NCBI GenBank assembly: GCA_002269645.1
Contig: NIVC01002638.1
Coordinates: 1 to 34,134, forward strand
Reading direction: 5' to 3'
Length of the DNA stretch: 34,134 bases
From: Macrostomum lignano
Lineage: Eukaryota
Shown: in pieces, positions 1 through 34,134 of the stretch
How the letters are laid out: every line of letters begins with the position of its first letter
How positions within the stretch are numbered: the first letter of the stretch is position 1
Translations under genes and position numbers: made by a program
The notes under the pieces: model-generated
Told to the model about the DNA's origin: nothing
The model's input: the letters and a program-made list of their open reading frames with translations, nothing else
Databases searched by the model: none

Positions 1-765
1 CAATATAGCTGTATGCTGCATGTGTCACTGACAATATGGCTGCATGTGTCACTGACAATATGGCTGTATGCTGCATGTGTCACTGATAATATGACTGTAT
101 GCTGCATGTGTCACTGACAATATAGCTGTATGCTGCATGTGTCACTGACAATATGGCTGCATGTGTCACTGACAATATGGCTGTATGCTGCATGTGTCAC
201 TGATAATATGACTGTATGCTGCATGTGTCACTGACAATATGGCTGCATGTGTCACTGACAATATGGCTGTATGCTGCATGTGTCACTGACAATATGGCTG
301 TATGCTGCATGTGTCACTGACAATATAGCTGTATGCTGCATGTGTCACTGACAATATGGCTGTATGCTGCATGTGTCACTGACAATATAGCTGTATGCTG
401 CATGTGTCACTGACAATATGGCTGCATGTGTCACTGACAATATGGCTGTATGCTGCATGTGTCACTGATAATATGACTGTATGCTGCATGTGTCACTGAC
501 AATATAGCTGTATGCTGCATGTGTCACTGACAATATGGCTGCATGTGTCACTGACAATATGGCTGTATGCTGCATGTGTCACTGATAATATGACTGTATG
601 CTGCATGTGTCACTGACAATATGGCTGCATGTGTCACTGACAATATGGCTGTATGCTGCATGTGTCACTGACAATATGGCTGTATGCTGCATGTGTCACT
701 GACAATATGGCTGTATGCTGCATGTGGCACTGTGTTGTATGCTGCATGTGTCACTGATAATATGG
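1..765. repeat. Minisatellite, 31-bp unit with 24-bp variant, in an intron of the MiT/TFE gene; runs off the left edge
   Basis: Unit CAATATRGCTGTATGCTGCATGTGTCACTGA (31 bp) and a variant lacking GTATGCT (24 bp). 24 complete units in 1-702, then degenerate copies. A 117-bp higher-order block recurs at 1-117, 118-234, 383-499 and 500-616. Confidence 0.97.
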
Positions 766-3900: not shown

Positions 3901-3961
3901 GAGGCTGCTGCTGAGCCTGTTCTTTAAGCAACTGCTGTCGCAGGTTGGTGCGCATAGCCAT
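901..3961 (-). CDS. MITF: MiT/TFE family bHLH-ZIP transcription factor (MITF/TFEB/TFE3-like), 3'-partial
   Basis: Exons (minus) 3961-3560, 2976-2574 (frame discontinuity near 2806-2831, see findings) and 1060-901. N-terminal MAMRTNLRQQLLKEQAQQQ and LENPTPYHL match the MiT/TFE N-terminal signature. The basic region/helix 1 KKDSHNRIERKRRENINHQIAELGEILP splices (AG|gtgagt at 2574, ccag|C at 1060) into helix 2/zipper DLKKNKGNILKASVDYIRELQ...LAMQIQ, then a gtcagc donor at 900. The symbol denotes the family; the specific paralogue cannot be assigned. Confidence 0.92.
1125..2400. repeat. Minisatellite of 16-bp subunits forming 32/33-bp dimers, in the MiT/TFE intron splitting the bHLH
   Basis: Alternating CATAGACAGATCGGGT and CATAGACAGCCTGAAT/CATGGAT (32-bp dimer). 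The 1180-1430 part has a 33-bp variant, CATAGACAGCCTGGGTCATTTGACAGATCGGGT. Confidence 0.97.
3141..3370. repeat. Minisatellite with 33-bp then 26-bp units in MiT/TFE intron 1
   Basis: TATTCACTTCCCGTGATCCCAATCTATCCCAGG repeats with period 33 (3146, 3179...), then ATATACACTTCCCGTGATCCCAATCA with period 26 (3271, 3297, 3323). Confidence 0.95.
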
Positions 3962-5553
3962 ACTCACTGGTTATAGAGTGAAAGCAAGGGTGCAGGCTGT
4001 GTACTTTATTAAAGCTGCTCTAGCCTGCACTGCGGCCAGCATGCACAGGATTATGTGAGAATATAATTCCCTCTAGGTGTCTGTCATAGCACATCAACAT
4101 GATATATAAGTGCCATATATTCTGGTAATTCATATTTCATTTCAAGTATCAATGCTTGTATAACTTTTGGGATTTCAAGAGTGGAATTAGGATCTCTATC
4201 TAGCTTATAAGCAAAAATGTTGGCTGGATGAAATCAGCATTCTTGGGATCAGATAGGATCTTGATCCCATCCTACCTGTACTATACCGGTAAGCATGGAG
4301 TCAGAGGCTTAGCAAAATAAAGGGTAGATTGTGACTTTTTTACTGATGCCAGCTGATTTAGAAACCAAGATGTAAAATGTTATTGCAATTTGAACACTTT
4401 CTGTCCAGGTCACTTTGTCTACTTGAGACATTTCATTTCAGAGTACTTTATGTTTATAATTAGTCTAGTGTTTTTGCTACTTGCTACCTACAATAATATG
4501 ATGACAATCGATTTGGGAAATTTGAGCTAAAAAGGTAGCATTTTGGTTTTTTAATATATTTCTATTTAGTGCCTTTTTCCAAGAACTAAAACCAACTGTT
4601 TCTAATATATCTTTCTAGGGAAAAAAACTGCATTCTTGACTTTAGAATTCTTATCCATAAAGTGCACTTTAATGCAAATTTGTATCAACTTTTTGGTAAA
4701 AACACTGCCTAGCTAAACAAAAGATCTAAACAAAAACAATAATTAGCAAATTGATTCTTAATGAACAAAAATGTGACATAGTTTTTGGCCAAAAAATGCA
4801 ACTTACATGTAAAAGAAACACTAAAGCAAAATTAACTCAAGTTTGGGTAAACGGCAGGAGTAACTATGATTGTCTTATTAAGGCAAAATGTCTCGTTATC
4901 TACTTAGTACTACTTGGGTATTTATTCAGGTGGGCATTTTTGCAACTTACCTTGGTTGGCTGCCAAATTGGTGAGCCGACTCGGCCAACTGTTGTGCATG
5001 TATGTACCTATTGCTATAAACTATGAGAAAGTTATAGAGTTTTCAATAGCCTACCTGCCTAACTACTTACCTAACTACCAATGCCAATAGTTGCAGACAT
5101 GGTTTAGATAAATAAAATTGTTATTCAAAATTGACTTTTCCAATTATTTTTCTTAGTAAACAGTTTAAGAAAGTAATAAAGAGTAATGTGGCCAAAGTGG
5201 CTTAATACTTTTCTTTTAGGTTGAACAATATATTGCAAGTCAAAATGTTGCATATTAAGGCTCCATGCCTCTATATATTTCTTATGAAAATAATTCTATA
5301 TTTTATTTATAGTTATAATCATCATTCTATCTTTAGTATATAATGAATATACTTTTTAAGGATTGTATAGCTAAAAAAAAAGTATTATTATCATTTAATT
5401 GCATTTCATATTCACTATTTTATTTCTTGGTCTTCTAAAATTTAGTAGGCCATAATAATTCAGCTGCAACAGGTAAACTATATTGATATTTTATATCCAC
5501 ATTTTAGCACTTTGAAATTCTGGGTGTCAACTAATTGCTAAGCAAATTGTTTG

Positions 5554-12941: not shown

Positions 12942-15900
12942 TCATTTTCTGGCAGCGGCCGCAAATGCGCGACCCTGTTTTAAATTGAGAAACTGCGGCT
13001 TCTTGCCAGCAGCGCCAACGCCGGATTTTTTACTCAACCAGCCGGAACCGGAAGCGCCAGTCGAGCTGCTGCCGGAAGCACTGGCGCCACCGCCGCCGGA
13101 AGTTGACGCCGCTTTTCGCTGCCTGCCGGCACCCCGACCTTTGCGCCACTTCCGGCCGGCAAAGTACTTGGACCGGTTGCCGCTGGCGCCACCGCCGCCG
13201 GAGCCGCTAGCGGACATGGCGACTGGAGCGGACTGGGCGGCCAGCCTTCGCGCCTTCTCCTCGGCCTCGCGCTCCTCGGCTCGCATAGTCTCAGTTAGCA
13301 GTAGGTAGTCCTGAGTAGTGATTAGGAATTTATCAGCGCCAAGATTTTCCACCTTGGCTTGGGTCATGCCGGTGATGGTTAGCAATTCTGTCACTGTGGT
13401 TGGCAGGCGCTCGGCAATCTCGCGCAGGCACTCAGTAGGGAACACGTTAGTGTAGTTCTTCACGCCCTTGTCCATGGCCAACTCTTTGGCTATCTTGGTT
13501 AGATCGTTCAAGCAGCTCTCCTTGGCCTGGGCGTACTTGTCCATTGGCTTCTTGTCGTCCTGATTGGCTGCCGCGGCTCGGTTGGACACCTGCGGCGTCG
13601 GGGATAATTATAGGCGGGGGGTCTTAGGTTGCACACACTGATCAGTAGGATTTTTCGCTTAGATTTTTCATATCCATAAGTCAGAGTCCTACTAGGGCCT
13701 GTGATTGTTAAGCTCGTTAGCTTTATCGCGATTAACGATTAATGTTGAGTGAGTACCGCTAATAGGGGGGGGGGGGGTACCGTAGCCCGGTGATGTAGCG
13801 CGGCGCTCTTATGTACTAGCGGCGCAGGCTCGATTCCAAGTGCAGTCACATTCACACTAATTTGGAGCTAAAAATTGGAATTTCGACTTGGGTTTGCTCA
13901 AGCAATTAACACCAAGCTTCATGGCCAACCCCAAGGCACTTGTGAAGTGTACATGCCTAACGATAAATAAATAAAGTTAGGGCCGCTGTACACTCCTGTG
14001 TGAATGTGTACCTGTGTATCCGCGCGCTTGTGTGCCTGCTCAGGGGAGTGGGCGGAATGGAGCAGTAATGCAAATACCCAAACCGCAACAGACAACTCTT
14101 CCTTACCTTGATTGCCAGCAGAAACCGGTGACCGGGCTGCTGCAGCAGGGCAGAGCGCGGGCCAGGCACGGCATAGGTGAATACGTGGTCGCCCTGGGAT
14201 ACCAGCTCCTCAGCCAGGTACTGATCGCAGATTAGCTTGCGCACTAGGCGCTCCATATCGGAGGTGTTAATGTGGCTGAGACTGCCGTACATGGCGTGAC
14301 TAGTTAGGCCCAGGCTAGTCAACCGGGCATTCTGCAGCCGCCTAAAGAACTGCACGAGCTGGCCGGGCGCCAGTTTAATCCGCTGGCTCTCCAGCAATTG
14401 GCGCACCAGATCAACAACAGTGGTGGCCTGTTTAGTAAAGTCGCGCTCTTCGAACTCGGCCCTATTATTGCAGTTGTCGCAGGCGCAGCCACGCATAGCG
14501 TCGCAATCGGATTTGTCGAAATACTCGCCAAAGTAAGTTAACAGCTGGGCTCGCCTACAGTCGGTGACGTTAATGCAGTAGGACACCATGCTGTTCAGGT
14601 TGCTGTGATGGATCTGCCGGGTCTCAAAACTGCCACCCTGTTCGCCTTCGATGAGGCGCTGCAGACGGACTTTGTCCGAATAGCAGAACAGCAGCAGGCA
14701 GGTGGACGGCCGGCCGTCCCGGCCAGCTCGGCCAGCCTCCTGGTAGAAGCCTTCGATAGACTTCGGCAAAGAATAGTGAATGACGAATCGAACGTCGGCC
14801 TTATCAATGCCCATGCCGAATGCTATGGTGGCGCACACAACTTTACAAGTGGCCTCCTGCAGCCAGTCTTGCAGCACTTCGCGCCTCTTGGTATCGGACA
14901 GGCCGGCGTGATAGGGCCGGGCCTTGATGCCCGCCTTGCACAGGGCGGTGGCCACCTGCTCGCACTCTTTCCTAGACAGGCAATAGACAATGCCGCTCTG
15001 GCTGCGATACGATTTATTAATAGTTTCAATTACTTGGTCAACGCTTTTAGTGCCTCGCTTCTGTTCGACTTGGTAGCGCAGGTTGGGCCTATTAAACGAC
15101 GAAGTGAACCATTTAGTGTCCTGCTTACGCAGGCCCAGCTGCTTCTCGATGTCCAGGCGAACCTGCGGGGGGCATATTGAATTATATATCCACACATCTA
15201 CTATTACGAGTATCTACAGATATATCTATAGTACGCATTTCACTGCCGACAGATCAGCAACGAATTGTTCGCCAACCGAAACCCCAACCCTTAGCCTGCC
15301 TAAACCAAACCCTACCTAACTCTAACCTAAACCCAACCTACCCTAACCTAAACCCAACCTACCCTAACCTAAACACAACCTACCCTAACTCTAATTTAAA
15401 CCCAACCTACCCTAACTCTAATCTAAATCCAACCTACCCTAAACCCAGTCTACCCTAACCTAAACCCAATCTACCCTAACCTAAACACAACTTACCCTAA
15501 CCTAAACCCAACCCACCCTAACCTAAACCCAACCTACACTAACCTAAACCCAACCTACCCTAACCTAAACACAACCTACCCTAACTCTAATTTAAACCCA
15601 ACCTACCCTAACTCTAGTCTAAATCCAACCTACCCTAAACCTAGTCTACCCTAACCTAAACCCAACCTACCCTAACCTAAACCCAACCTAAACACAACCT
15701 ACCATAATAACCCTAACCTAAATCCAACATTCGTCCCTAACCCTAACCTACCCTAAAAACTGAAATCAGAGTAGACGCTCTATTTTGTCACAACTTAACA
15801 TGTAGTTAATCTAGTATCTTGAGATTTCGCCGCACTGTTTTGAGCGAAGCAATTAAACTATAACCATTATTTACAATTTATAGGACTACTGTAAGTATAA

Positions 15901-18056
15901 TACACTACATTTAGAAGCACAACAGGGCCTACCTGAGGCGTAGCCGTCGCAGTTAAAGCCATCATTGGCACATTTGGAAAAGAAGTTCTTAGCCGATTTA
16001 AATTTCGATAATCCTGCCTAAAATCGTGGCCCCATTGGCTGACGCAGTGGGCCTCGTCAATAACAAATCTGTCTAATTTGCCGCGCTGATACAGAACAGA
16101 GAAGCACCGCTGCAGTTTATCAGATTGGCTAATCTTTTCAGGCGTCACATATAACAGCTGCACCTGACAGCCGCTAGAATTAGTGAGCATGGCAAACACC
16201 TGATCCTGCTGCTGCGGCGATATGTCTCCAGTCAGCTGGTAGGTTCTAATGCCTAGAGACGTCAGCTTATTAACTTGGTCGGTGATGAGCGACAGCAGAG
16301 GGGACACCACCACGGTGCAGCCGTCAGTGACAACAGCTGGCAGCTGGTAGCACAGGCTCTTGCCGCCGCCCGTAGGCATCAGCACAAACGTGTCGTGGCC
16401 AAGCAAGCAGGCGTTAATAGCCTGCAGCTGGTTGCGACGGAACTCTTTCAAGCCGAACACCTCTCGGAAGGCGAGCCGCACCCGGTCCGAGTGCGGATAG
16501 GCCTCGCCGCCGAATTCAGCCGAGTGGTCCGGCTGCTTCGTGGCCGCGGCTCCAGCGTGGGCGGGCACGGCGGCGTTAGCCACGGCCGAGGTCCATTTCG
16601 ATTGACGCGCCTCTAACGGCACGTAGTCATCGCCGGCGGTGGCTTCGGCCGCTGTCAGCGTCTTTTTTGGTTTGGGAGGCTCAGCCGAGTTGACTGACAA
16701 CATCGAAGGCTTCGAGGTTGGACAGTCGAAATCGAGCGAGGCACGAATTGCCGGCATTGGCGGCTTATCAGCGACGGCAGCAGCTACCGCAGGTTTAGAT
16801 GCGCCAACAACAGAGCTGGCCGAAGCTGACGCTGTCATCGAAAATGAGGCGTTGATGCCAAAGTCCAGTCCACTGGAGTCGATGGCGCCGCGGGTCCGCT
16901 TGAACAGCGGCTTCCGCTCCGGCTCTGGCAGGGTGGCGGCAGCCGCGGTCGCTTGAGCCGGCTTCGGCTTTTGTTTACCCTCTGTCGCGCTTTTAGGCGT
17001 CTGTTGCTTAGCAACGGTTGAAGTCGAAGCTGACGCGTCGCTGTCTAGATGGCCGCGCAGCTCTCCAAGCAGGCGGAAGACGTCCGTAGCTGACTGGCCA
17101 AACGCGTCGAACAGCTGGCCGGAGGGCAAGTCGCGAACCGCCACGCAGATGCCGCGCATCGACTTGTACACTCGCTTCGTAAGGCGGATCTCCGCATCGC
17201 CTGTACTGTCGTTGTTGTCGGGCGGCGAGTCGTCCTCCTCCTCGACCACATCGGCGGAGTCATCGTCCACAACAAAGTCATCATCGTCGTCGTCGTCGTC
17301 GTTGTCAATTTGAAATTCAATTCGATGGCCGCCGACGTTTTGGTCGTCATCCGAATCCGACTGAATTCGCTGGCGCTTGCGGCCGGTGCTTGGAATTGGC
17401 GTTGGCAGAGAATCGTCGGCATCCAACTGCTGCTGGTTGCCAGCGCTGACAGGCTGGAAGTTCGATGCCGTCTTCAACGAATTGGCGGCGGCTGTCGGTG
17501 CGGCAGCAGTAACAGCAGCCGCCGAAGTAGCGGGCGTTGTCGGCGCGGCCTGGGTGGTAGACGAAAGCACGTCGGATCGATTAATGGATAGCGGCATTCG
17601 AAAGTCGAATTCGTCATCAAAGTCGTCGATGAAATCGGCGTCATCTTCGTAGCCCGACGGCTCAGGCATCGCCGCGGCGTCTGAAGCGGACAGCTGCTGC
17701 TGGGCCCGCTGGGATGTTGGATTGGCAAGAAGATCCACCACCTGTGAGTCTCTGGCATAGACGCTTGACAGCAGAGTTGGCCGGGAGGCCTCTCCGCCGG
17801 CCGACTGTTGCTGATGGTGCACGGGAGTTGGCGGCACCTTGGCTGTTGGCACCAGTTTAAACGGATTGCCGAGACTGCTTGGCTTTGAGCTGGATGCGTT
17901 AGGCGTTGCTTTGCTGACTAATGTCTGCTTCTGCTGCCCTACTGGCCGCTCGCTACTAGCAGCATCCGAGGTCAGTGTAAAGTCCAATATACTTCGATTG
18001 CCTGCGTCACCGCTGGCGCCTGACTTAAAAGATTTAAATGTGAACTTGCGCGACAT
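12942..18056 (-). CDS. BLM: Bloom syndrome-type RecQ DNA helicase, 3 coding exons, 1275 aa model
   Basis: Exons 18056-15933 (CAG|gtaggc), 15162-14107 (cgcag|GTT...AAG|gtaagg) and 13589-12942 (cgcag|GTG...TGA), all phase 0. Motifs: [71 protein letters not shown] Zn site ([12 protein letters not shown]...[12 protein letters not shown]), winged helix and HRDC. The long acidic/disordered N-terminus and basic C-terminal tail fit BLM better than RECQL1/4/5 or WRN (no exonuclease). Confidence 0.93.
13779..14060 (+). mobile_element. tRNA-derived SINE, family B, in BLM intron 2
   Basis: B-box-like GGCTCGATTCC at 13827-13837. The body ATGGCCAACCCC...GTGTACATGCCT.ACGAT...AGGGCCGCTGTACAC...TGTGTGA is homologous to the minus-strand copy at 29950-30276. 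Confidence 0.7.
15280..15756. repeat. Telomere-like (CCCTAA-derived) 21/27-bp minisatellite in BLM intron 1
   Basis: Unit ACCTACCCTAACCTAAACCCA (21 bp), with 27-bp variants carrying an extra CTCTAA. Tandem CCCTAACCCTAA near 15735. Confidence 0.95.
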
Positions 18057-23629: not shown

Positions 23630-26155
23630 TTAGCTCGCAAAGCCCAGCTCCTGGCCGCCTTCCTGCTCGGCTCGCCTGCGCTGCTGCTTGCGCAGCTTCC
23701 GGCCCTCGGCTGCCTGCTGGCTGTCACTGTCAGGCTGATCACGGCGCTCCAGCGTCTTCACTATCAATCGGACGCCGAGAACGGCGCCTGCGCAGCCGAT
23801 GAGGGCTGTGCAAAAAATAATAATGATAATAGCTGATTATTAGGAAGTCATAAATAAGAATATTATATTTCTAAGCTGATTCTGTGAGATAAGTGAGGTA
23901 AGCCGAAATGATTTATGCATATACCGTATGTCCCACAAAAGCCAACCATCTAATTGCACCGATCTCTAGTGGCTACATGTAGATCGTGCAACGCATACCG
24001 AAGGAACATCCTTACCGAACATACCGAAGGGCCAAATGTGCAACCGACAGCTCAGCCGCAGCTACTGAAGGCTGCGTACGGCTGTCCTTCCATCCAAGGA
24101 CTGGGGTGTCCCCCGCCAGGGGGGGGGGTTTACTAGGCTGAAATTTCACTAGGCCAAAACTTCAAATTGCCGAAATAGCTAGCACGCTCTTTCATAAGTT
24201 TCGGACTATGTGAAAGAGGCTACTAAATGATTTTTCGGCAATGTTAAGTTTCGGCCTAGTGAAGTTTTGGAATAGTGAAGTTTCGGCCTAGTAAAGTTTC
24301 GGCCTAGTGAAGTCTTGGAATAGTGAAGTTTCGGAATAGTGAAGTTTCGGAATAGTGAAGTTTCGGCCTAGTGAAAGACGCTGCTAAAATGATTTTTCGG
24401 ACGTTGTGGAATTTCAGCCTAGTGAAGTTTCGGCCTAGTGAAAGAGAGTGATTTTCGGTGAAGTGAACTTTCGGCCTAATGAAAGCGCCCCGGTCGCCAC
24501 ACACACCCACAATGACCCCAGCTAATGCTGGCACCAATTTTACGAGCGTACAGTTGGCTGAACCGAAGCAATGCAGAAAGGTAAGTGTCTTGCTCCACTC
24601 AAATCGAACCCCCGACCTTTCAGTCGTGAGTCCGATGCTCTAACCACGAGGCTACCACTCCATTAGGCTATAGCCATTGAAAATAGGCGCGTGTGCCCAT
24701 AGCATAATCCGATCCGGAAGATGTTGTCTATGGTCTGAATTCGCCTATGTGCAAAGCTTCTGCCTCCCAAGGACTATACTCGTAGCTCCTGTACCAATGA
24801 TTGCCTTAAAGGCCAGTACTTGCCTTTCCCACATATTTACATGCAAAAGAAAAATGCGTAAACTCAATAAAAAATGCCAGCCATGCAATTAACCTCAATC
24901 CGAACACCAAGCAGACACCAGATTCACTTGCTGCTACGCTATTTTCGTACCGATGGCTCATTTGAAGGCATGCGGTCAATCCTAGAAACTGTTTTTGAAT
25001 GCTCACGTGTGCTCAAGGCCTGCGACAATGTGTGTCAAAACTTACCGGCAAACGTGGCTCCAACTATGATGTAGTAGTCGTGTGGCGTTGGGATTGCTGG
25101 CGGATTACTGGTGTACCGACAGACTGGAATTTCACGATCGATATTGAATGTTAGTGTGATTTGCATTGATTTTCATTGTGTGTTGAAGTCAATTTATGAG
25201 TTTATTTAACGCTATGTCGTAGATACCTGTAAATCAGGAGCCCAGCACCTAACATGATTCCGCTCACTAAGGAGATATGAATCAGAGGTTCTGACCAACA
25301 AATTCTATTCAATCAATTGCAACTTAAGTAAGGTGGGAAGGGAAAGCTAAAACGTTACTTTGAATTAAATGAACTCAAGCATTCGCTCACTAAGCAGCCT
25401 GTACGAACAGCTCCAGACTCCAGTCACACATGCATTACCTTCAATGTCAGACCTGTGACACACTGTAAGCACCACATCGGCTGGCTCGGCACAGGAGTCC
25501 CAGGGTGGAACATTTTCGCACGGATAATCCGCCAAGTTGCCATCGTAGCTGACCATGGTGCAGTTCTCGACGCAGTAGGAGTAGCTGGGCTCCGATTTGC
25601 TCCACTCGATCCCCGTAGTGTTCCCAGTCTTCACGAAGTCCTCCGTGGCCAGCGAGCCGTCGAAGTCGCTGCCGGACTGCCAAGTCCACTCGGAGCTGCC
25701 AGTGCGAACGAAGCCCGTCCAGAAGCGTCGGTTTTCAATGTAGATTCGCAGCCGCTGCCAGCCGTAGGCAGTTCTCATCATTGGCAGGGTGGCATTGTAC
25801 AGGGCGCAGAAGTCTCTAGCCTGAGCCCAGGTGAGGTAGTAGCTCGAGTTCAGATGGAACAGGCAGAATTCCTCACTCTTGTAGACGGACACGTCGCTAG
25901 CATTGGCTGGCGGGTTGCTGTTTCCGATGATGCCGGATGAAAGGGCTTCCCTGCTGATCGGCGCTTTGAAGCCTGATTGTTGGCGGGGTGAACAATTCCT
26001 GCTCTACATTATGGCATTGGGACTTGTTTATTCAAATTGAGACTCGTGATTTACTTACACGCCTTAGCTGGCATTTCGCAGACGACCATCTGACAGATGC
26101 TTCCTAACAATATTATTACTATAGAGCTGAATTTACCGCAAATGACATAAGCCAT
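23630..26155 (-). CDS. Type-I transmembrane C-type lectin domain protein, 4 exons, 294 aa model
   Basis: Exons 26155-26059 (signal peptide MAYVICGKFSSIVIILLGSICQMVVC, gtaagt donor), 25972-25439 (lectin domain: TWAQARDFC, FWTGF, WSKSEPS, ENCT, LADYPC, TVC), 25123-25046 (stalk PPAIPTP, gtaagt donor) and 23805-23630 (TAA). All junctions are phase 1 and total 885 nt. The TM helix YYIIVGATFA|ALIGCAGAVLGVRLIV is formed across the last junction; the tail is short and charged. Confidence 0.88.
24029..24660 (-). mobile_element. tRNA-derived SINE, family A, interrupted by an insertion; in lectin intron 3
   Basis: Head GTAGCCTCGTGGTTAGAGC...GGTTCGATT at ~24660-24600. Body segments match the copy at 29641-29925 on both sides of an insertion at ~24105-24491. 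Confidence 0.8.
24105..24491. repeat. Inserted element made of 16-bp repeats in direct and inverted orientation
   Basis: GTTTCGGCCTAGTGAA / GTTTCGGAATAGTGAA tandem units at ~24248-24375 and ~24400-24483, with inverted copies (TTCACTAGGCC...) at ~24130-24170. Confidence 0.8.
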
Positions 26156-27699: not shown

Positions 27700-28610
27700 G
27701 GAGGACACGAGGGGGACAGGGAGGACACAGGTTGGGACGGAAAGGACACCAGGGTGGGACGGAGAGGACACAAAGTGGGACGGAGAGGACACAGGTTGGG
27801 ACGGAGAGGACACGGGGTGGGACGGAGAGGACACAGGGTGGGACGGAAAGGGCTCAGGGTGGGACGGAAATGGGCACAGGGTGGGACGGAAAGGGCACAG
27901 GGTGGGACGGAGAGGACACAGGGTGGGACGGAGAGGACACAGGGTGAGACGGAGAGGACACAGGGTGGGACGGAGAGGACACAGGTTGGGACGGAGAGGA
28001 CACAGGGTGGGACGGAGATGACACAGGTTGGGACGGAGAGGACACAGGGTGGGACGGAAAGGGCTCAGGGTGGGACGGAAAGGGCACAGGGTGGGACGGA
28101 AAGGGCACAGGGTGGGACGGAGAGGACACAGGGTGAGACGGAGAGGACACAGGGTGAGACGGAGAGGACACAGGGTGGGACGGAGAGGACAAAGGTTGGG
28201 ACGGAGAGGACACAGGGTGGGACGGAGATGACACAGGTTGGGACGGAGAGGACACAGGGTGGGACGGAGAGGACACGGTGAGATGGAGAGGACACGATCG
28301 GTGGGGATAGGGAAGACACGAGGTGAGGACAGAGGACACGAGGTGGGGAAAGGGAGGACACGATGTGGGGACAGAGAGGACACGATGTGGGGACAGGGAG
28401 GACACGATATGGGGACAGGGAGGACACGATGTGGGGACAGGGAGGACACGATGTGGGGACAGGGAGGACACGATGTGGGGACAGGGAGGACACGAGGTGG
28501 GGACAGGGAGGACACGATGTGGGGACAGGGAGGACACGATATGGGGACAGGGAGGACACGATGTGGGGACAGGGAGGACACGAGGTGGGGACAGGGAGGA
28601 TACGAAGAAT
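27700..28610. repeat. Purine/G-rich minisatellite, 21-bp then 22-bp units
   Basis: GGACACAGGGTGGGACGGAGA (21 bp, ~27760-28280) followed by GGACACGATGTGGGGACAGGGA (22 bp, ~28340-28600). Confidence 0.97.
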
Positions 28611-28701: not shown

Positions 28702-31700
28702 TCAGTCTGCAGGCGTTGGCAGCAGGGCTCGCAACCGGTTAGCTACTTGGCCAGCTGTCAGGCTGCAGCTCGACTCCGTGTAGCCCGCTGGTGCCAGGGG
28801 ATCCGGCTGGCACTCCAGCAGAAGGCGGTCCAGATCAGCTGATGCTTCTGCTGTCAGCTCGAAGTCCACTGGCACTGCGTGTACTGCAGGACCAGATCTG
28901 ATTAAAAATGAAAATGAAACGTTACCAAGCCTAATAGCATCGAAGGAAATCATCACTTGCAACTGTGACGAACTCACGTCAGACTCTGTAGAATCCGTCC
29001 CAAACAGCAGACATCTTGGCTAACCAACTGACTGAAGAGCATGCAGCCTGGTGGTTTAGAGCCATCTGGCAACTCCTTGTCTGGCAACAATTGCTGGCCG
29101 AGGTCGGACAGCTTCACCACCGCCGACTCGGTGCCCGACCGAATCACCTGAGATGTTTTTCCAACAAAAACTTCATTTTGCCTTCAAAAACTCAAAGCAA
29201 TCAACTTCAACTGTTCCTTGCCCGACCTCCCCGCTTCCTACTTACAAACACATTGGCGGCGTGCAGATTTCCGTGCGCCAGTCGGCTCTCCGAGTGCAGC
29301 TTCGCCAGCGCGTCCGCTGTTGCCAAGCCAACGACCAGCCGCTTTCGCAGCGAGGGTTGCAGGGCCAGGAAATCCAGCAGATTGCGGCCGTCAGCCATGA
29401 ATGGCATGTACAACTGCAGTCTCCAGACATCAGGTGCGGTCAGTCTGTACAACCGCAGGCCAGCGATGTGGACTAGATTCTCGTTCATTTCACTGTATTT
29501 GGAAATTAGAAGTAAAGCAAAATTTGTTAGCTCATTCCAATGAGGAATCGTTGAAAGCGTTGAGAAAATTTGATAAACAGTTAAATTTAGGTTCTGATCA
29601 GTTGCTGCCTATAATTTAATAATATTAATTAATAAGTTACTACACCTGCCTTTTGGGCCATATGCGCAACCGACAGCTCAGCCGCAGCTATTGCGCGGAG
29701 CATCTGAGGGCTGCTTACGGCTGTTCAGTCCAAGGACTGGGGGTCGCCTCGCACACCCTCAGTTACCCCAGCTAATGCTGATTTTAAAGAATTTACAGCT
29801 GGGTGAACTGAAGTACTGCAGAGTTGTGTCTCTCTCAAGGACACAAAATGTTCCGAGTGGTTAAGAATCGAACCCCGACCTTTCAGTCGCGAATCCGACG
29901 CTCTAACCCCTAGGCTACAGCCCCCTTGCCCATGCCTCAAATAAATAATTTAAATACTCGTTGGAGGGCTGGGGGCACCCCGGCGCAATGAATTCGGCGA
30001 AATCGTCCCACACAACCAGTGCTGAGACGATTCTGCCCATCCCGCTGAGTCCTGAGCACATGCAAGCGCGCCAATACTGTACGCAGGTGCCCACTCATGC
30101 ACACGCTCACACAAGGGTGTACAGCGGCCCTTTGACTTTCTAATCGTCAGGCATGTACACTCTCTGCGGGGGTTGGCCATCGTGACGCCCCCCCCCCCAG
30201 GCAATTGGCCGCGCACGGAATCGAACCGGGGGTCGCGTGGGGCGAGAGTCGGACGCGTTTAACGCACAGTCCGCTAAAAATATGCAAGCTCCAGTGGCTT
30301 TAACATCATTTCATACACGAAGTAGATCGTATTTTTTAAAGTTATCAAGACATCAAGAACTTAGTACATTTAAGTACTCTCTGATCTTTTACAAGTACTC
30401 GTAAATACAGGCAGTTAAAGTAAAGGGACGCTACACTCGCTCAATAGTGTACGTTGCATCGGAGGCTGGAGTTTGCTAATTCCGGGATCACGATAGTAGC
30501 ACTGAGAATTTTGCCAATACCGGATTCAAAAGATTACAGTTTTCTTTTTTGTCAATTTATTAGGTTTGTTTTACATTTTTTATGCTTCCTTCTTGCTTTG
30601 TTCAATTATGCTGTATGCATGCAGAGTTTTACTCTTTAAATATGACAAATGGAGGATCTTGTATGCGATAATGCGTTGCTTGATGTTTAAGATTTACAGA
30701 TATTTGATATAGTTTTCGGTATGATGTAATTTATTGCACTAACAAAATGTTTCTATCTATCCTTCTTCCTTTCTCACTGATGCATTTTGTAAAAAAAACA
30801 CTGGCTTGTAGCGAAATTTTCACACCTTGCTAGTGTGTACGGTGGTCCTTTTAGCTGTACTTCAGCTGTCCATGCCTTTATTCTGCACTTAAAACTGAGT
30901 TTCAGGCGCTTTAATAAAGTCAAATGGGCCGCCTAGGCATCGGCAAGTGAAAATTGCCTCCTACCGACTGACGTGCAATCCGGGAGCAATCTCGCCCAGC
31001 TGTCTGTCGCTGAGCATCATCTCCTTGACGGCCAGGTCTCCGCCGCAGCGGTAAAGCTTGCTGCCTTGAGACCCGGATGCCACCAGCTTCCATTCGTCGG
31101 ATTCGCCTCCGCAGAGCTGCAGTTCTCCGCACTCGGTCGCGACGCTGTCCAGCTGTAGACTTATCTTCAAGCATAGCGGCAGCAGAGCCAGACTGAGACG
31201 CCGTCTGTCCATCGCTGTTCGAAGGTCGAGCTGGACCCGGTCTTCAGCGGCCTGCACTGCCGCCAGAATTCCTCTGTGCAGCTCTTCAAACCAGCGGCGA
31301 AGGTCCTGCAGGACTCCGTCGGCCAGTTTATTCAGTTTGAGCTTTCCTGCGGTTGAGTAGCAGTGATCTGCATCAGTGCTGGCTTTCTAGCAGTTTTCAG
31401 TTCCTTTTCAGCGGTACACTAAAAAAATGACTTAAAACCCAAAATATTACAGTGCATACTGAGTTTTACTGACTATACTCGTAAAATACGGCAGAGTGCT
31501 TTTATTAAATAATTTTGAGTACACACAGTTGTCACTTCCTCACCAAGAAACTCCTCTACATTCAGCCGTCTCAAATCTGCATCCCTCGATGGCACCTTCG
31601 GTCGTAGTCGCAGCCTTGACAATCCTTTCGGCGGCTTGCAGCCATCATCAAGCAACAGTTCCGCCAATTGGCGCCGCAGGCTCCGCTCCGGCACGCGGAA

Positions 31701-33700
31701 TCCTTCTGTGGCGGCTGGCACGAGTTTCTGCGGGCCCTCGCCACCAGCCGCTTCTTCAACCTGCTTAGCCAGCGACACGCCGCGCTGGAAACAGTCGGCC
31801 AGTCGAGGCAGAGCGAAGTCGAAGTCGCCGCCAATCCGGTCGGTTAAGATGTCTAGTAGCTCCAATCTGGAAGGAGACTCCGCAGCTCCGGCTGATGCCT
31901 TCGCCAACTCGCTACACCGTTGCTTCAGTGCTGCAGTCAGCCATCGAACCAGATTGCGTGCGGTCGCTGCACCGGATGCCTCGGACTCTGAGTCGGCTAG
32001 AAGGCAAACCGCCGCGTGCCCGGCGTCCAGAAGAGTCAGTCGCCGCCTGTGGCAGGCCTCCTCGCTAGCCAAGGAGGCCGCCTCATCCAGGTCCTTGTGC
32101 AAGTAATCTAGCAGGGCTCGACGGAGGCTGGTGGCTGCCTCTAGCGGAAGTTCAGTCAGACGACGTTTCGCGAATGAAGAAAGCGACGACTTCGCCAACT
32201 GGAAGGCCTCCAGCCAGCGGGTCTCGTCATCGCTAGCTATCGTCAGCTGCTTCATGCGGAGCTGCTGGCGTCGGTGGCGCCGTCTAACTGTGGCCACGAT
32301 GCGGCTGGAAATGCAGCAAAATCGATACGAACATGGCGGCTCTGATACCTGCTGGCTACTGTGCTGATTATGATACTGATTTTTGCCATAATCCACTGGC
32401 TTCTCAGATTCCGGTTCGATGATGCAGCCTAACCGCCGGAGTCCCGCGAGCAGGCGCTGTAGCTTCTCTCGCTCCAGTGTCTCTCTGGTGCGGCCGCACC
32501 CGGCCGAGATGTCCCCATCATCAATATCCATGTGCGTGGCCAGGTAGAATAACTTGTCCGGGCCGCCTACCCTGGTCTGCAGGTTGACAATGTCGGCTTC
32601 GACCTGTGGTGTTAAATCGAGAGTAAATTACTGAAATAGACTCGCAATTTGCAGCTTGTGACTTTAGCGTAGTTATTTTAGTGGAAATGTGAACAGAAAC
32701 AGAACCCTCACCATGCGGCTCACGCCATTGTTGGCATTGATAACGTAGACAACCAGAGGCAGGAAGGCATCCACCGCACTCAATGTGAGCTCGTCCAATC
32801 GCGCGTTCTCATTGAGGCCCGGTGTGTCCACCAGATCCAGGCCGCTAGCCAGAAGAAACTCGCTGGGCCGCCCGATGACCGCCGGCGAGAGCTCGCCATT
32901 GGCTTCGGGATCTTCAATGGGACTGTCGAAGGGCTCCGCTGAGTGCACGATCCGCACCACTTGGCTTGTGCACGGATGCTGCGACTGGGCCAACACCTGC
33001 TGGCCTGGACAGAGGATTGATGTAGCGTGTTTCAGAATCAATATTCTTTAAAAGTTAGGAAAGGCGATTTAACCGAAACGGAGACAAAAGTAAAGCTCGG
33101 AACAGGTCGACTGAAATCGCTGGGACACCGCAGTCAGGTCCCTCCCTTGAGCTCCCAGTCTCAGAATTCGCTCAGAATTGTGTCGCTGAAATCGGCGTTT
33201 CTAGGATGGGATTTCTCTGTGTTCCCATCAAGCCGACTGGTCTGGCAAGTTATCAATTGCACTCGGTGCTCGAGCTGACATTTCTTCTATGGACAGGGTA
33301 CTTACGGTACCTACGTAGCTGTTCTCTTACGAGCGTATCTATACTTTAGTTTTGTGCTGAACTAGGATATTAACTTTGCCCCAATAAGCACTCAGTACCC
33401 AGTCTCCTCACCCAGCAGCTCATTGATGAAGCTGCTCTTGCCGGCCTTAGTCTGGCCGACAATCAACAAGCAGACGCGACACTCCGCATCGCCTTGTCTG
33501 CCACGCCGCCCCCTCAGCCTCAGCAGTTTCTCCACCTCGCTCGCAACCGCCTCCAACCGCTCAGCTGATGTCGCAGCTACTATCTGCCTCGCCTCTTCCA
33601 CTAGACAACGCACTTCATCAAGCGCATTGGCCAGCCTCTGACGATTAAGCAAAAACTGATCGAGATAGTTTGGTAGCTGCGCCATTTGCTGCTTGTCGAT
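28702..33700 (-). CDS. Dynamin-like GTPase fused to a kinase-fold (pseudokinase) domain, DSTYK-like architecture, 7 exons, ~873 aa from ATG 33685
   Basis: Exons 33700-33412, 33004-32712, 32603-31544, 31346-30965, 29492-29246, 29147-28978 and 28897-28702 (TGA). All introns are GT-AG and phase-consistent (1,0,1,2,0,2); 2622 nt from ATG 33685. GTPase: GQTKAGKSSFINELLG, HPCTS, LVDTPGLN, LATHMD. Kinase fold: ASGSQGSKLY, LAVKE, NENLVHI, AHGNLHAANVF, VKLSDLG, QDVCCLG. The true start may lie further upstream. Confidence 0.85.
29641..29925 (-). mobile_element. tRNA-derived SINE, family A, near full-length copy in an intron of the GTPase-pseudokinase gene
   Basis: A-box TAGCCTAGGGGTTAGAG (29917-29901), B-box GGTTCGATTCT (29874-29864), TGTGTCCTTGAGAGAGACAC core and AT-rich 3' flank. 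Confidence 0.85.
29950..30276 (-). mobile_element. tRNA-derived SINE, family B
   Basis: B-box GGTTCGATTCC (30227-30217) with a tRNA-Glu/Asp-like CTCTCGCC loop. Body homologous to 13921-14045. Confidence 0.75.
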
Positions 33701-33868
33701 CTGTGCAGGCAGGTGAGAGAGATAATGCATAAAATTGCCGTACACTGTATGGGGCAGATATTGCTGCTGCTGTTAGCTTGTCAGATTGAGAGAAAGGGTT
33801 CGGAGACAGGTAGCTATAGTGTACACCAAGATGTGTTCTGTGCAACTCAACGCACACCAGCTCCGATC

Positions 33869-33900
33869 CTCTCTCTCTCCGTCTCTCTCTCTCTCTCTCT
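33869..33900. repeat. (CT)n/(GA)n microsatellite
   Basis: CTCTCTCTCTCC-GT-CTCTCTCTCTCTCTCTCT, about 170 bp upstream of the first identified exon of the GTPase-pseudokinase gene. Confidence 0.95.
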
Positions 33901-34134
33901 TTCCTCTGCAAAGAGATTCGACTCGAAATTGTAACGTATATACTACACATATCTTATCTACAGTATAGCTCCTTAGTAAACAGGATTCATCTCAGGCAAG
34001 CAACTTGAAGCTTGTAGGCTTGTAGGTTTATTACTACATAGCGTAAAAGACTGCAAAAGAAAGTTTGACGCGAAATATTCATTGCTCTGCGTCCAACTTA
34101 GCTCATTATTCATAATATATTGAAATAAACTCTT

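What the first reader, a model, noticed from the sequence alone, without database searches (positions are those of the whole stretch)
28702..33700. Intact dynamin-like GTPase fused to an apparently dead kinase
Seen: one spliced ORF joins a P-loop GTPase with all four G motifs (G1 GQTKAGKS 33457-33434, G2 Thr in HPCTS, G3 DTPG 32828-32817, G4-like THMD) and a long helical region to a kinase fold. That fold keeps the beta3 Lys (AVK, 31032-31024) but has HGNLHAAN in place of HRDxKxxN (Asn for the catalytic Asp, 29269-29267), DLG for DFG (29105-29097), and no recognisable APE. Established: HGN-type catalytic loops mark pseudokinases such as JAK JH2 and the kinase-homology domains of receptor guanylyl cyclases; dynamin-like GTPases remodel membranes and several act in cell-autonomous immunity. 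Inference: the layout and size resemble DSTYK/RIPK5, which as I recall has a canonical kinase and a degenerate N-terminal P-loop region. This protein could be the reciprocal case, a membrane-remodelling GTPase regulated by a pseudokinase module. It is the best candidate here for an undescribed system.
Basis: partly seen in the sequence, partly recalled or inferred. Interest (0 to 1): 0.82.

Follow-up and report, generated by a model that had tools for sequence, protein, structure and literature searches.

The report
Flatworm DSTYK copy with dead kinase
This is a real, transcribed gene of the flatworm Macrostomum lignano: an extra, fast-evolving copy of DSTYK whose mitofusin/dynamin-like GTPase half keeps its nucleotide-binding motifs while its kinase half has lost its catalytic residues, so it varies a named but poorly understood family and is not a new system.

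Summary
Seven GT-AG exons on the minus strand (33685-28702) give an 873-aa protein, and every motif sits at the stated coordinates. Pfam finds Dynamin_N. The AlphaFold2 model matches BDLP and mitofusin-1 over the N-terminal part and protein kinases, including the MLKL pseudokinase, over the C-terminal part. The window is Macrostomum lignano. A 99%-identical copy is annotated from RNA-seq transcripts as one mRNA spanning both halves.

The gene is a divergent paralogue of DSTYK. It groups with the three canonical M. lignano DSTYK paralogues (100% bootstrap), shares 5 of 6 intron positions with one, and lies next to it in a cluster. Canonical invertebrate DSTYKs have intact G motifs and an intact kinase. 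Human DSTYK has degenerate G1, G3 and G4 with an intact kinase. This protein keeps G1-G3 and the G4 Asp (G4 Lys to His) but has lost the HRD Asp, alphaC Glu, Gly-loop, APE and subdomain XI Arg.

So "reciprocal of human DSTYK" is right, but the layout is ancestral to the family. At least 20 other DSTYK-like proteins (cnidarian to amphioxus) and two more M. lignano lineages also pair an intact P-loop with a degenerate kinase. Constraint among copies is weak (omega 0.34 to about 1). Function remains inferred. Interest is moderate.

The parts
28702..33685 (-). Whole coding region of the DSTYK-like gene: 7 exons, 873 codons plus a TGA stop at 28704-28702.
   Evidence: GT-AG at all six introns, in frame. 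A 99% identical transcript-derived GenBank protein PAA78588.1 (P0001) has the same exon structure.
33412..33685 (-). Exon 1: N-terminal helices and G1 (aa 1-91 and the first base of codon 92).
   Evidence: The intron position is shared with paralogue P0009.
32712..33004 (-). Exon 2: G2 and G3 (aa 92-189).
31544..32603 (-). Exon 3: G4, the end of the G domain and most of the helical stalk (aa 190-542).
30965..31346 (-). Exon 4: end of the stalk and the kinase N-lobe (Gly-loop remnant, beta3 Lys, alphaC).
29246..29492 (-). Exon 5: kinase hinge to catalytic loop (HGNLHAAN).
   Evidence: The junction across the 1.47-kb intron 4 is supported by alignment to paralogues (HVSR|EMNENLVHIAGLRL against HSSVLEHDNLVHVVGVRL).
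28978..29147 (-). Exon 6: DLG and a shortened activation segment without APE.
28702..28897 (-). Exon 7: remnant of the kinase C-lobe, and the stop codon.
32421..33481 (-). G domain (aa 69-250, spanning introns 1 and 2), of the dynamin/BDLP/mitofusin type.
   Evidence: Pfam Dynamin_N. PDB sequence hits to BDLP and Fzo1. Foldseek matches to BDLP and MFN1. It is 44.6% identical to canonical paralogue P0003.
33434..33457 (-). G1 / P-loop, GQTKAGKS (aa 77-84).
   Evidence: In the aligned stretch GQTK[S/A]GKSSFINELLG only this one residue (Ser/Ala) differs from P0003.
32964..32978 (-). G2 region, HPCTS (Thr104).
32817..32828 (-). G3, DTPG (aa 151-154).
32526..32537 (-). G4 variant, THMD (aa 212-215). 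The Lys is replaced by His and the specificity Asp is kept.
31099..32420 (-). Helical stalk (aa 251-625, spanning intron 3): long helices aa 289-615 and a basic low-confidence loop around aa 509-525.
   Evidence: AF2 secondary structure. Foldseek alignments of up to 728 columns to BDLP. Only about 20% identical to paralogues.
28705..31098 (-). Kinase-fold domain without catalytic residues (aa 626-873, spanning introns 4-6).
   Evidence: Alignment to DSTYK paralogues. Foldseek matches to kinases and the MLKL pseudokinase. Pfam PK_Tyr_Ser-Thr is sub-threshold.
31060..31080 (-). Degenerate Gly-rich loop, ASGSQGS (family consensus GxGxQG).
31024..31032 (-). Beta3 AVK; the Lys (K650) is retained.
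30976..30990 (-). AlphaC position IAPGL; the conserved Glu is replaced by Gly, with a Pro before it.
29252..29275 (-). Catalytic loop HGNLHAAN (family consensus HRDxKxxN). The Arg, Asp and Lys are lost; the distal Asn750 is kept.
29097..29105 (-). DLG (Asp767 kept). DLG is also the normal form in human DSTYK.

Best explanation
Shown: the gene is a Macrostomum lignano-specific paralogue of DSTYK (the 'dusty' kinase). It arose by whole-gene duplication within a local cluster of DSTYK-like genes. It is transcribed as one mRNA. It encodes a soluble protein with three parts: a mitofusin/BDLP-type G domain, a long helical stalk and a C-terminal kinase fold. The ancestral family protein had both an intact GTPase and an intact kinase. 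This copy has kept the GTP-binding and hydrolysis motifs (G1, G2 Thr, G3, G4 Asp). It has lost what a kinase needs for phosphotransfer (HRD Asp to Asn, alphaC Glu, Gly-rich loop, APE, subdomain XI Arg), so the C-terminal domain is a pseudokinase.

Inferred mechanism: the protein still binds GTP and probably hydrolyses it, and undergoes the G-domain dimerisation and stalk rearrangement typical of BDLP/mitofusin-type proteins. The dead kinase domain retains the beta3 Lys, the catalytic-loop Asn and the DLG Asp, so it may still bind nucleotide. It would serve as a docking or allosteric module. The most plausible partners are the catalytically intact DSTYK paralogues encoded next to it, and the most plausible site is endolysosomal membranes, where vertebrate DSTYK acts.
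For: Family identity:
- The best non-self hits are M. lignano DSTYK paralogues carrying Dynamin_N, MMR_HSR1, Pkinase and PK_Tyr_Ser-Thr.
- The alignment is collinear over the full length.
- In an NJ tree of 727 columns the protein groups with P0003, P0009 and P0012 at 100% of 200 bootstraps.
- 5 of 6 intron positions are shared with P0009 within one residue.
- In the 98.5%-identical copy the canonical paralogue P0009 lies 1.1 kb upstream on the same strand, and a further degenerate paralogue is on the same contig.

Single mRNA: GenBank protein PAA78588.1 has the same seven exons. That annotation was built only from RNA-seq and transcript assemblies with TransDecoder ORFs (PMC5730564).

Fold: the AF2 model has pLDDT 70.8 and pTM 0.64. 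Foldseek matches BDLP 2j69 at 4e-12, MFN1 5go4 at 8e-10, and kinases and the MLKL pseudokinase at about 1e-5.

Selective retention of the G domain:
- G-core identity to P0003 is 44.6%, equal to the cross-phylum value between P0003 and the Lineus protein (43.9%).
- The kinase part is 30.6% identical, below the cross-phylum value of 39.7%.
- omega for this copy against the L001 copy is 0.34 overall (12 synonymous, 12 non-synonymous changes; one-sided binomial p 0.008) and 0.13 in the G domain.

Recurrence: at least 20 other family members and two other M. lignano lineages (HQD/PFG type P0008, P0047 and P0213; P0030) keep GxxxxGKS while losing kinase motifs.

Membrane context of the family: DSTYK localises to late endosomes and lysosomes, and its overexpression fuses and enlarges them (PMC6981171).
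Against: - No biochemical or expression data exist for this gene, and no paper mentions it.
- The G domain is not pristine. G4 Lys is His (unique in the census) and about 35 residues between G2 and G3 are deleted. Model confidence is below 50 over residues 117-134.
- Constraint among the three near-identical copies is weak. omega is 0.8-1.0 against the L002 copy, and that copy has seven 1-bp indels in exons 1-2.
- The stalk is only about 20% identical to paralogues and is rich in Leu, Ala and Arg.
- No transmembrane or clearly hydrophobic membrane-binding segment is present.
- No orthologue outside M. lignano was found, so long-term conservation cannot be measured.
Confidence: 0.62

Rival explanations
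1. It is a decaying duplicate. After duplication the copy lost kinase function, is now drifting towards a pseudogene, and has no role of its own. The intact ORF and G motifs are leftovers.
For: omega is 0.83 and 1.04 against the L002 copy over exons 3-7, and 1.0-1.3 in the kinase part, not different from neutral. L002 has seven 1-bp indels in exons 1-2. The branch is very long, with several deletions. P0030 looks like a further-decayed relative sharing the same G2-G3 deletion. No orthologue was found outside the species.
Against: The 873-codon ORF and all 12 splice sites are intact here and in L001. omega between these two copies is 0.34 (p 0.008), and 0.13 in the G domain. Despite about 72% overall divergence from its paralogues, the G1 stretch differs from P0003 at a single residue and G2 and G3 are kept, while kinase motifs are not. 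That pattern needs long purifying selection on the G domain. The gene is present in a transcript-based annotation. The L002 indels occur with 0 substitutions in exon 2, which looks like long-read assembly error.
Confidence: 0.22
2. It is a fast-evolving innate-immunity GTPase, working like Mx, GBP or IRG proteins. On this view the DSTYK-like expansions in marine invertebrates are defence gene arrays, and the pseudokinase is a sensor or decoy domain.
For: There are lineage-specific clustered expansions: several paralogues on single scaffolds in Ptychodera, Saccoglossus, Glandiceps, Lingula and M. lignano. Divergence is rapid and catalytic motifs are lost repeatedly. A C-type lectin gene is the downstream neighbour here and in L002. 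MxA is among the structural matches.
Against: No expression, induction or pathogen data exist. omega never exceeds 1 significantly. The best structural matches are fusion-type proteins (BDLP, mitofusin), not Mx or GBP. The one characterised member, vertebrate DSTYK, acts in development and lysosome biogenesis. Lectin adjacency may be coincidence.
Confidence: 0.12
3. The kinase domain is still active through a non-canonical mechanism, as in WNK, CASK or the weak activity of JAK2 JH2. On this view the protein is a bifunctional GTPase-kinase like its paralogues.
For: The beta3 Lys650, the catalytic-loop Asn750 and the DLG Asp767 (the nucleotide and metal ligands) are retained. From memory, JAK2 JH2 has an HGN catalytic loop, binds ATP and has been reported to have weak activity. 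The kinase fold is predicted with fair confidence for the N-lobe and catalytic core.
Against: Five independent elements are lost together: the catalytic base Asp, the HRD Arg and the Lys two residues on, the alphaC Glu, the Gly-rich loop geometry (an insertion and G to A), and the APE with the P+1 loop and its subdomain XI Arg partner. The activation segment and C-lobe are the least confident parts of the model (769-789 and 813-853 below 50). Pfam kinase models fall below threshold.
Confidence: 0.06
4. The model wrongly joins two neighbouring genes: a GTPase gene and a separate kinase-like gene.
For: Intron 4 is long (1.47 kb) and contains a dispersed repeat. UniProt holds conflicting automatic models for this locus (686, 1038 and 1557 aa).
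Against: The frame runs through six canonical introns. The order and spacing of all segments match full-length DSTYK proteins from flatworm to human. Intron positions are shared with the paralogue. The transcript-derived GenBank model spans all seven exons.
Confidence: 0.03

Closest known systems
Human/vertebrate DSTYK (dusty kinase, 'RIPK5'; NP_056190.1)
   Same: Homologous over the whole length: the profile of invertebrate DSTYK-like proteins matches human DSTYK at E 6e-94 over 840 columns, and the window protein is collinear with those proteins. The order is the same: N-terminal helices, G-domain fold, long helical region, C-terminal kinase fold. Size is similar (873 against 929 aa). Both have DLG in place of DFG.
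   Different: The motif status is the mirror image. Human has G1 GQDCNVKC, G3 VAPC and no TKxD, with an intact GxGxxG, Lys, Glu, HRD and APE. The window protein has an intact G1-G3 and a dead catalytic loop. It is not the orthologue of vertebrate DSTYK but a lineage-specific paralogue.
Canonical M. lignano DSTYK paralogues (P0003/Mlig021056g2, P0009/Mlig014911g1, P0012/Mlig016260g1)
   Same: Same clade (100% bootstrap), same intron positions and same genomic cluster. The G1 stretch GQTK[S/A]GKSSFINELLG differs at one residue, and the G2 and G3 neighbourhoods are closely similar.
   Different: Those proteins pass the Pfam Pkinase threshold (136 bits for P0003) and have HRDVK, DFG and APE. The window protein is only 27-29% identical overall. 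It has a roughly 35-aa deletion in the G domain, a roughly 21-aa insertion after it, a deleted APE segment and a truncated C-lobe.
Other DSTYK-like proteins with a degenerate kinase (e.g. Nematostella XP_032222785, Lingula XP_013414054, Branchiostoma XP_019629833, Ptychodera XP_070553788/798, Glandiceps XP_077983941)
   Same: Same overall state: an intact GxxxxGKS, DxPG and [NST]KxD with HRD, DFG and APE lost, and a length of 850-960 aa.
   Different: They form separate clades from the canonical DSTYK group, whereas the window protein nests inside the canonical group with its M. lignano paralogues. Its loss of kinase motifs is therefore independent. None of these proteins has been studied, as far as the held literature shows.
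BDLP / mitofusin (Fzo1) fusion-type dynamin-like proteins
   Same: They are the best sequence matches (2j68 at E 3e-6, Fzo1) and the best structural matches (2j69 at 4e-12, MFN1 5go4 at 8e-10) for the G domain plus helical bundles. The G3 context (xVxxP..L..GhxhVDTPGLN) is similar.
   Different: The window protein has no transmembrane segment or hydrophobic paddle. It has an extra C-terminal kinase fold. Identity is only 13-17%. Its GTPase activity and membrane binding are untested.
HGN-type pseudokinases (JAK JH2) and the MLKL pseudokinase
   Same: A kinase fold with the catalytic Asp replaced while the beta3 Lys is kept. MLKL pseudokinase structures are among the Foldseek hits (5ko1, 6o5z).
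   Different: There is no specific sequence relationship, and the HGN is convergent. The comparison with the JAK JH2 sequence is from memory and was not tested here.
ROCO proteins (LRRK2 and relatives)
   Same: A GTPase and a kinase fold in one polypeptide. Paralogues with one inactive module are known in that family (from general knowledge).
   Different: In ROCO proteins the GTPase is a Ras-like Roc domain with a COR dimerisation domain, not a dynamin-type G domain with a stalk. No homology beyond the generic folds was seen.

Membership tests
DSTYK (dusty kinase) family | Full-length collinear homology to DSTYK proteins | tested here: met
   E 1.6e-57 to M. lignano DSTYK. Alignment A1 is collinear. 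Human DSTYK aligns to the same family profile at E 6e-94. Clade support is 100%.
DSTYK (dusty kinase) family | Domain order: N-terminal G-domain-like region, helical region, C-terminal kinase fold | tested here: met
   Pfam Dynamin_N, the AF2 model and Foldseek matches to BDLP/MFN1 plus kinases.
DSTYK (dusty kinase) family | Catalytically competent dual-specificity kinase domain (Lys, alphaC Glu, HRD Asp, D[FL]G, APE) | tested here: not met
   HGN replaces HRD, the alphaC Glu is Gly, the APE segment is deleted and the Gly-loop is altered. Only the Lys, the distal Asn and the DLG Asp remain. The Pfam kinase score is below the cut-off.
DSTYK (dusty kinase) family | One-to-one orthology with vertebrate DSTYK | tested here: not met
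   It is one of several M. lignano paralogues and sits on a long branch inside the M. lignano group. No orthologue was found in other species.
Dynamin superfamily (BDLP/mitofusin-type) | G domain with G1 GxxxxGKS/T, G2 Thr and G3 DxxG | tested here: met
   GQTKAGKS, PCT and DTPG align with the family motifs. Dynamin_N scores 56.6 bits.
Dynamin superfamily (BDLP/mitofusin-type) | G4 (N/T)KxD | tested here: inconclusive
   THMD: the Thr and Asp are kept and the Lys is replaced by His, the only such case among the 43 aligned members. The effect on guanine binding is unknown.
Dynamin superfamily (BDLP/mitofusin-type) | Helical bundle or stalk following the G domain | tested here: met
   Predicted helices span aa 289-615. 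Foldseek alignments of 590-728 columns to BDLP and the bacterial dynamin pair. This rests on a predicted structure only.
Dynamin superfamily (BDLP/mitofusin-type) | Membrane-binding element (TM, paddle or PH domain) | tested here: not met
   The maximum 19-residue Kyte-Doolittle mean is 1.75, in a buried G-domain strand. Distant dynamin-kinase proteins P0174 and P0183 reach 2.4-2.5. Only a basic loop around aa 509-535 could play this role, and that is inference.
Dynamin superfamily (BDLP/mitofusin-type) | GTP hydrolysis stimulated by G-domain dimerisation; membrane remodelling | not testable with these tools
   This needs recombinant protein, nucleotide-binding and GTPase assays, and liposome assays.
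Pseudokinases | Protein kinase fold | tested here: met
   Homology to the kinase domains of DSTYK paralogues. Foldseek probability 1.0 to many kinases, target TM-scores 0.5-0.6.
Pseudokinases | Loss of at least one essential catalytic residue (VAIK Lys, HRD Asp, DFG Asp) | tested here: met
   HRD Asp is Asn745, and this is conserved in all three copies.
Pseudokinases | Absence of phosphotransfer; nucleotide-binding class | not testable with these tools
   This needs kinase and thermal-shift assays.

The most novel reading that the evidence does not exclude
DSTYK, an understudied human disease kinase (urinary-tract malformations, spastic paraplegia SPG23), would be in origin a mitofusin/BDLP-type fusion GTPase fused to a kinase. 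The two enzymatic halves would be separable. Vertebrates kept the kinase and silenced the GTPase. Many invertebrate paralogues, this flatworm gene included, independently kept the GTPase and silenced the kinase. On this reading the flatworm protein is a GTP-driven tether or remodeller of endolysosomal membranes whose dead kinase domain pairs with, and regulates, the active DSTYK paralogues encoded beside it. No paper in the held library describes the dynamin-like nature of the DSTYK N-terminus or these pseudokinase paralogues.
Probability: 0.3. Interest if true: 0.65.

Novelty: new variant of a known kind. Interest (0 to 1): 0.45.

Why it matters
The gene itself is a lineage-specific duplicate and matters little on its own. 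It matters for what it shows about its family. In human DSTYK the kinase domain lies at the C-terminal end (aligned from about residue 640), and none of the held papers that were searched assigns a fold or function to the region before it.

The comparison made here shows three things:
- That region is a silenced dynamin/mitofusin-type GTPase with its stalk.
- The ancestral protein had both activities.
- Evolution has switched off either half repeatedly.

This gives a concrete hypothesis for why DSTYK sits on late endosomes and lysosomes and enlarges them when overexpressed. It also provides natural separation-of-function variants: GTPase-only proteins such as this one, and kinase-only proteins such as the human one. 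Macrostomum lignano has RNAi and transgenesis, so the roles of the canonical and the pseudokinase paralogues could be compared directly.

Tried and rejected
- Pfam on the full protein gave no kinase hit at E <= 1. The C-terminal fragment alone gave only a sub-threshold PK_Tyr_Ser-Thr hit. Kinase identity therefore had to come from paralogue alignment and fold.
- The PDB sequence search gave only a weak kinase hit (TOPK, E 0.25).
- Two word-indexed homologue searches (P0003, and the profile A2) did not retrieve vertebrate DSTYK. An exact look-up then showed it to be NP_056190.1/Q6XUX3.
- The first tree script timed out. The second produced a meaningless comb because the Kimura correction failed at high distances. 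Only the Poisson-distance NJ tree is used. It is a simple distance tree: deep nodes have support below 40% and are not interpreted.
- ARAGORN and Rfam found nothing in the window, so the tRNA-like stretch in intron 4 is not called a tRNA.
- A search for the gene identifiers in papers, and in the supplements of two M. lignano papers, found nothing. There are therefore no expression data.
- PMC4277547 (Peng et al. 2006, the original dusty kinase paper) is not held.
- An operon or trans-splicing link to the upstream paralogue was considered. A UniProt fused 1557-aa model exists, and an AG lies 15 nt before the ATG. The idea is not claimed, because GenBank gives the two genes different transcriptional-unit names.
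- Whether the L002 indels are real or assembly errors could not be decided.

Full report
**1. Observation**

Reading the minus strand and joining seven exons gives a 2622-nt CDS with GT-AG at all six introns and no internal stop. The exons are 33685-33412, 33004-32712, 32603-31544, 31346-30965, 29492-29246, 29147-28978 and 28897-28702, and the product is 873 aa. Mapping residues back to the genome reproduces every coordinate in the finding:
- G1 GQTKAGKS 33457-33434
- DTPG 32828-32817
- AVK 31032-31024
- the Asn of HGN 29269-29267
- DLG 29105-29097

**2. Is it more than chance?**

- Pfam reports Dynamin_N at 56.6 bits (cut-off 27, E 4e-15) and MMR_HSR1 at 33.8 bits.
- The closest solved sequences are the bacterial dynamin-like protein BDLP and yeast mitofusin Fzo1.
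- The kinase part is not recognised by Pfam on the whole protein. On its own it reaches 18.2 bits against a cut-off of 23.1.
- An AlphaFold2 model built on a 19-sequence alignment has pLDDT 70.8 and pTM 0.64. It shows a six-stranded G domain, helices from 289 to 615, and a bilobal alpha/beta domain from 629 onward.
- Foldseek against the PDB matches BDLP (4e-12), mitofusin-1 (8e-10 to 5e-8), a bacterial dynamin pair and MxA over the N-terminal part. It matches several hundred kinase structures, including the MLKL pseudokinase, over the C-terminal part.

**3. Source and transcript support**

The protein is 99% identical to GenBank PAA78588.1, hypothetical protein BOX15_Mlig005846g1 of Macrostomum lignano. 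The DNA of that locus (L001, NIVC01000677.1) is 98.5% identical through the first 2.7 kb compared, which runs from the upstream flank into exon 3, and has the same seven exons and splice sites.

The GenBank annotation of that assembly was derived only from RNA-seq and transcript assemblies (StringTie, TACO and a de novo transcriptome), with ORFs called by TransDecoder (PMC5730564). The deposited protein starts four residues upstream of the Met (DKQQM...), as a 5'-open transcript ORF would. This is indirect evidence that one mRNA joins the GTPase and kinase-like halves. I could not map reads myself.

A third copy (L002, NIVC01000921.1; P0002, 96% identical) is annotated only from the Met at the end of exon 2. 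In that assembly exons 1 and 2 carry seven single-base indels. Exon 2 has five indels and no substitution, which looks more like long-read assembly error than decay, but I cannot decide this.

**4. What it is**

[quoted passage not shown] They are 28-31% identical (E 1.6e-57) and carry Dynamin_N, MMR_HSR1, Pkinase and PK_Tyr_Ser-Thr. Searching with one of them, and then with a profile, found three canonical M. lignano lineages (P0003, P0009, P0012). It also found DSTYK-like proteins of a nemertean, hemichordates and a soft coral, all with Dynamin_N plus a kinase.

The exhaustive representative search with the window protein found no closer relative outside M. lignano. Only two hits fell below 1e-30, and both are M. 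lignano. It did return about 30 proteins of 850-960 aa. Cluster look-ups name these DSTYK or DSTYK-like in Tubulanus, Lineus, Lingula, Ptychodera, Glandiceps, Saccoglossus, Branchiostoma and Nematostella.

Status of each motif in the alignment with canonical members:
- G1: kept (GQTKAGKS; one residue differs from P0003 in the stretch GQTK[S/A]GKSSFINELLG).
- G2: kept (PCT).
- G3: kept (DTPGLNEN).
- G4: TKMD has become THMD.
- About 35 residues between G2 and G3 are deleted.
- About 21 residues are inserted after the G domain.
- Gly-rich loop: GSGAQG has become ASGSQGS.
- Beta3 Lys: kept.
- AlphaC Glu: now Gly, preceded by Pro.
- Catalytic loop: HRDVKxxN has become HGNLHAAN.
- DFG: now DLG.
- The GTPxxxAPE segment is deleted.
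- The subdomain IX Asp is kept.
- The subdomain XI Arg and the helix before it are lost.

A distance tree on 727 profile columns places the window protein with the three canonical M. lignano paralogues in 100% of 200 bootstraps. It lies inside the canonical DSTYK group and apart from the other degenerate-kinase clades. Deeper nodes are unsupported and I do not interpret them. Five of six intron positions coincide within one residue with those of P0009.

In L001 and L003, P0009 lies 1.1 kb upstream on the same strand. An inverted kinase-bearing fragment lies further upstream. A further paralogue with HQD and PFG (PAA78585.1) is on the same contig. In L002 the neighbours are P0003 and another kinase gene. 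The window ends 449 bp upstream of the ATG, so its own upstream neighbour is not visible.

The gene is therefore a clustered whole-gene duplicate of DSTYK that lost its kinase catalytic residues within the Macrostomum lineage.

**5. The family picture**

I aligned 43 sequences to the canonical profile and read the motif columns.
- Sixteen have all G motifs and all kinase motifs.
- Human DSTYK has GQDCNVKC for G1, VAPC for G3 and no TKxD, with an intact kinase. It aligns to the invertebrate profile over 840 columns at E 6e-94.
- At least 20 others, from Nematostella to Branchiostoma, have an intact GxxxxGKS, DxPG and [NST]KxD but lack HRD, DFG, APE, the beta3 Lys or the alphaC Glu.
- Within M. 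lignano, two further lineages keep the P-loop and have degenerate kinase motifs. One is P0008, P0047 and P0213 (HQDVA, PFG). The other is P0030, which shares the G2-G3 deletion and local motifs (DRQL, SDVGQ) with the window protein but has lost G2, G3 and the catalytic core.

But the layout is the family's ancestral one, and the GTPase-kept, kinase-lost state is recurrent.

**6. Is the gene under constraint?**

Identity to P0003 by domain, compared with P0003 against its nemertean counterpart:
- G core: 44.6% against 43.9%.
- Kinase part: 30.6% against 39.7%.
- Stalk: 20.5% against 23.1%.

The G domain has thus been held about as tightly as in canonical orthologues across phyla, while the kinase part has not.

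Among the three near-identical copies, omega behaves as follows:
- Window against L001: 0.34 (12 synonymous and 12 non-synonymous changes; one-sided binomial p 0.008), and 0.13 in the G domain.
- Against L002: 0.83-1.04, not different from neutral.

The counts are small. Taken together, the evidence favours a gene that was long maintained for its G domain, with at least one copy now possibly relaxed.

**7. Mechanism**

Shown: the fold, the motif states, the family membership and the single transcript model.

Inferred from established knowledge of BDLP/mitofusin-type proteins: GTP binding through G1-G4 drives G-domain dimerisation and stalk rearrangement. Whether His in place of the G4 Lys, or the deletion between G2 and G3, impairs this is unknown. 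The model is below pLDDT 50 in residues 117-134.

The kinase domain cannot use the canonical mechanism, because five elements are missing. It keeps the Lys, the distal Asn and the DLG Asp that ligate nucleotide and metal, so nucleotide binding without transfer is plausible.

No transmembrane or strongly hydrophobic segment exists. More distant dynamin-kinase proteins (P0174, P0183) do have one. Any membrane contact would have to come from a basic loop near residues 509-535 or from partners.

Vertebrate DSTYK localises to late endosomes and lysosomes and enlarges and fuses them when overexpressed (PMC6981171). That fits a fusion-type dynamin ancestry and suggests where this protein may act. Pairing with the adjacent active paralogues is my best guess for the role of the pseudokinase. 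It is untested.

**8. Rivals**

- A decaying duplicate is the main one (0.22).
- A fast-evolving defence GTPase is suggested only by clustered expansions, rapid divergence and a lectin neighbour (0.12).
- A non-canonically active kinase is unlikely (0.06).
- A mis-joined gene model is unlikely (0.03).

**9. Novelty**

Searches of the held literature for DSTYK together with dynamin, GTPase, pseudokinase, AlphaFold or mitofusin returned no paper that describes the N-terminal region as dynamin-like or that mentions pseudokinase paralogues. A search for dynamin-like together with pseudokinase domain gave the same result. Reviews treat DSTYK as a divergent kinase of little-known function. The original 2006 description is not held, so I cannot exclude that the similarity was noted there or in subscription journals. 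Databases already detect Dynamin_N in the invertebrate proteins and auto-name them DSTYK-like.

I rate this a new variant of a known kind. The specific gene is of modest interest. The family-level reading is the more interesting part.

**10. Verdict**

- Observation: confirmed.
- Interpretation: partly supported.
- Interest: 0.45.

Noticed in passing
window 27701-28605: A tandem array of 21/22-bp units (GAGGACACAGGGTGGGACGGA and a variant; about 28 plus 14 copies) begins about 100 bp downstream of the gene's stop codon. It creates long spurious ORFs on both strands (up to 295 aa). The same array follows the gene in L001.
   Followed up: partly
window 29621-29924 (intron 4); L001 4638-4942: A dispersed repeat inside the 1.47-kb intron 4 is also present, inverted, in an intron of the neighbouring paralogue in L001 (83.5% identity). 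By eye it contains a tRNA-like stretch, but ARAGORN and Rfam find nothing. It may be a SINE-like element.
   Followed up: partly
window 12945-18056 (-): A RecQ/BLM-type helicase gene lies here: DEAD (15870-18056), Helicase_C + RecQ_Zn_bind + RQC (13960-15195) and HRDC (12945-13589). A 21-bp array (AACCTAAACCCAACCTACCCT, about 18 copies) sits at 15299-15690 between the coding blocks.
   Followed up: partly
window 25368-25892 (-); L002 16191-18771: A C-type lectin domain ORF lies downstream of the DSTYK-like gene. A Lectin_C gene is also the downstream neighbour in the L002 copy.
   Followed up: partly
window 3491-3967 (-): An ORF with a MITF/TFEB/TFE3 N-terminus domain (30.8 bits) and poly-Gln runs lies here. 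This is a curiosity, because zebrafish Dstyk acts through mTORC1/TFEB. It is about 25 kb from the gene and is probably coincidence.
   Followed up: no
window 1-765 and 1178-2383: Two further large tandem arrays (31-bp and 32-bp units, about 25 and 37 copies) lie at the low-coordinate end of the window.
   Followed up: no
L002 9040-10003 (NIVC01000921.1): The third copy of the gene has seven single-base indels in exons 1-2 and none in exons 3-7. Exon 2 has five indels and no substitution. This is either local long-read assembly error or the start of pseudogenisation of the GTPase half. It explains why the GenBank protein there is N-terminally truncated.
   Followed up: partly
L001/L003 (NIVC01000677.1, record 190653-221554): DSTYK-like genes are clustered. 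An inverted kinase-bearing fragment and a duplicated exon 2 of P0009 lie upstream, then canonical P0009, then the pseudokinase gene. PAA78585.1 (HQD/PFG type) is on the same contig. UniProt holds fused or partial automatic models of this locus (1557, 1038 and 686 aa).
   Followed up: partly
proteins P0174, P0176, P0183, P0186 (Glandiceps, Xenia, unnamed assemblies): A more distant group of proteins combines a Dynamin_N domain, a strongly hydrophobic mid-protein segment (19-residue KD mean 2.4-2.5, mitofusin-like) and a C-terminal kinase or degenerate kinase. Dynamin-kinase fusions therefore extend beyond the DSTYK clade.
   Followed up: no
window 33868-33902: A (GA)n microsatellite lies about 200 bp upstream of the start codon. 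An AG lies 15 nt before the ATG, close to where the transcript-derived GenBank model begins, and could be a trans-splice acceptor.
   Followed up: no
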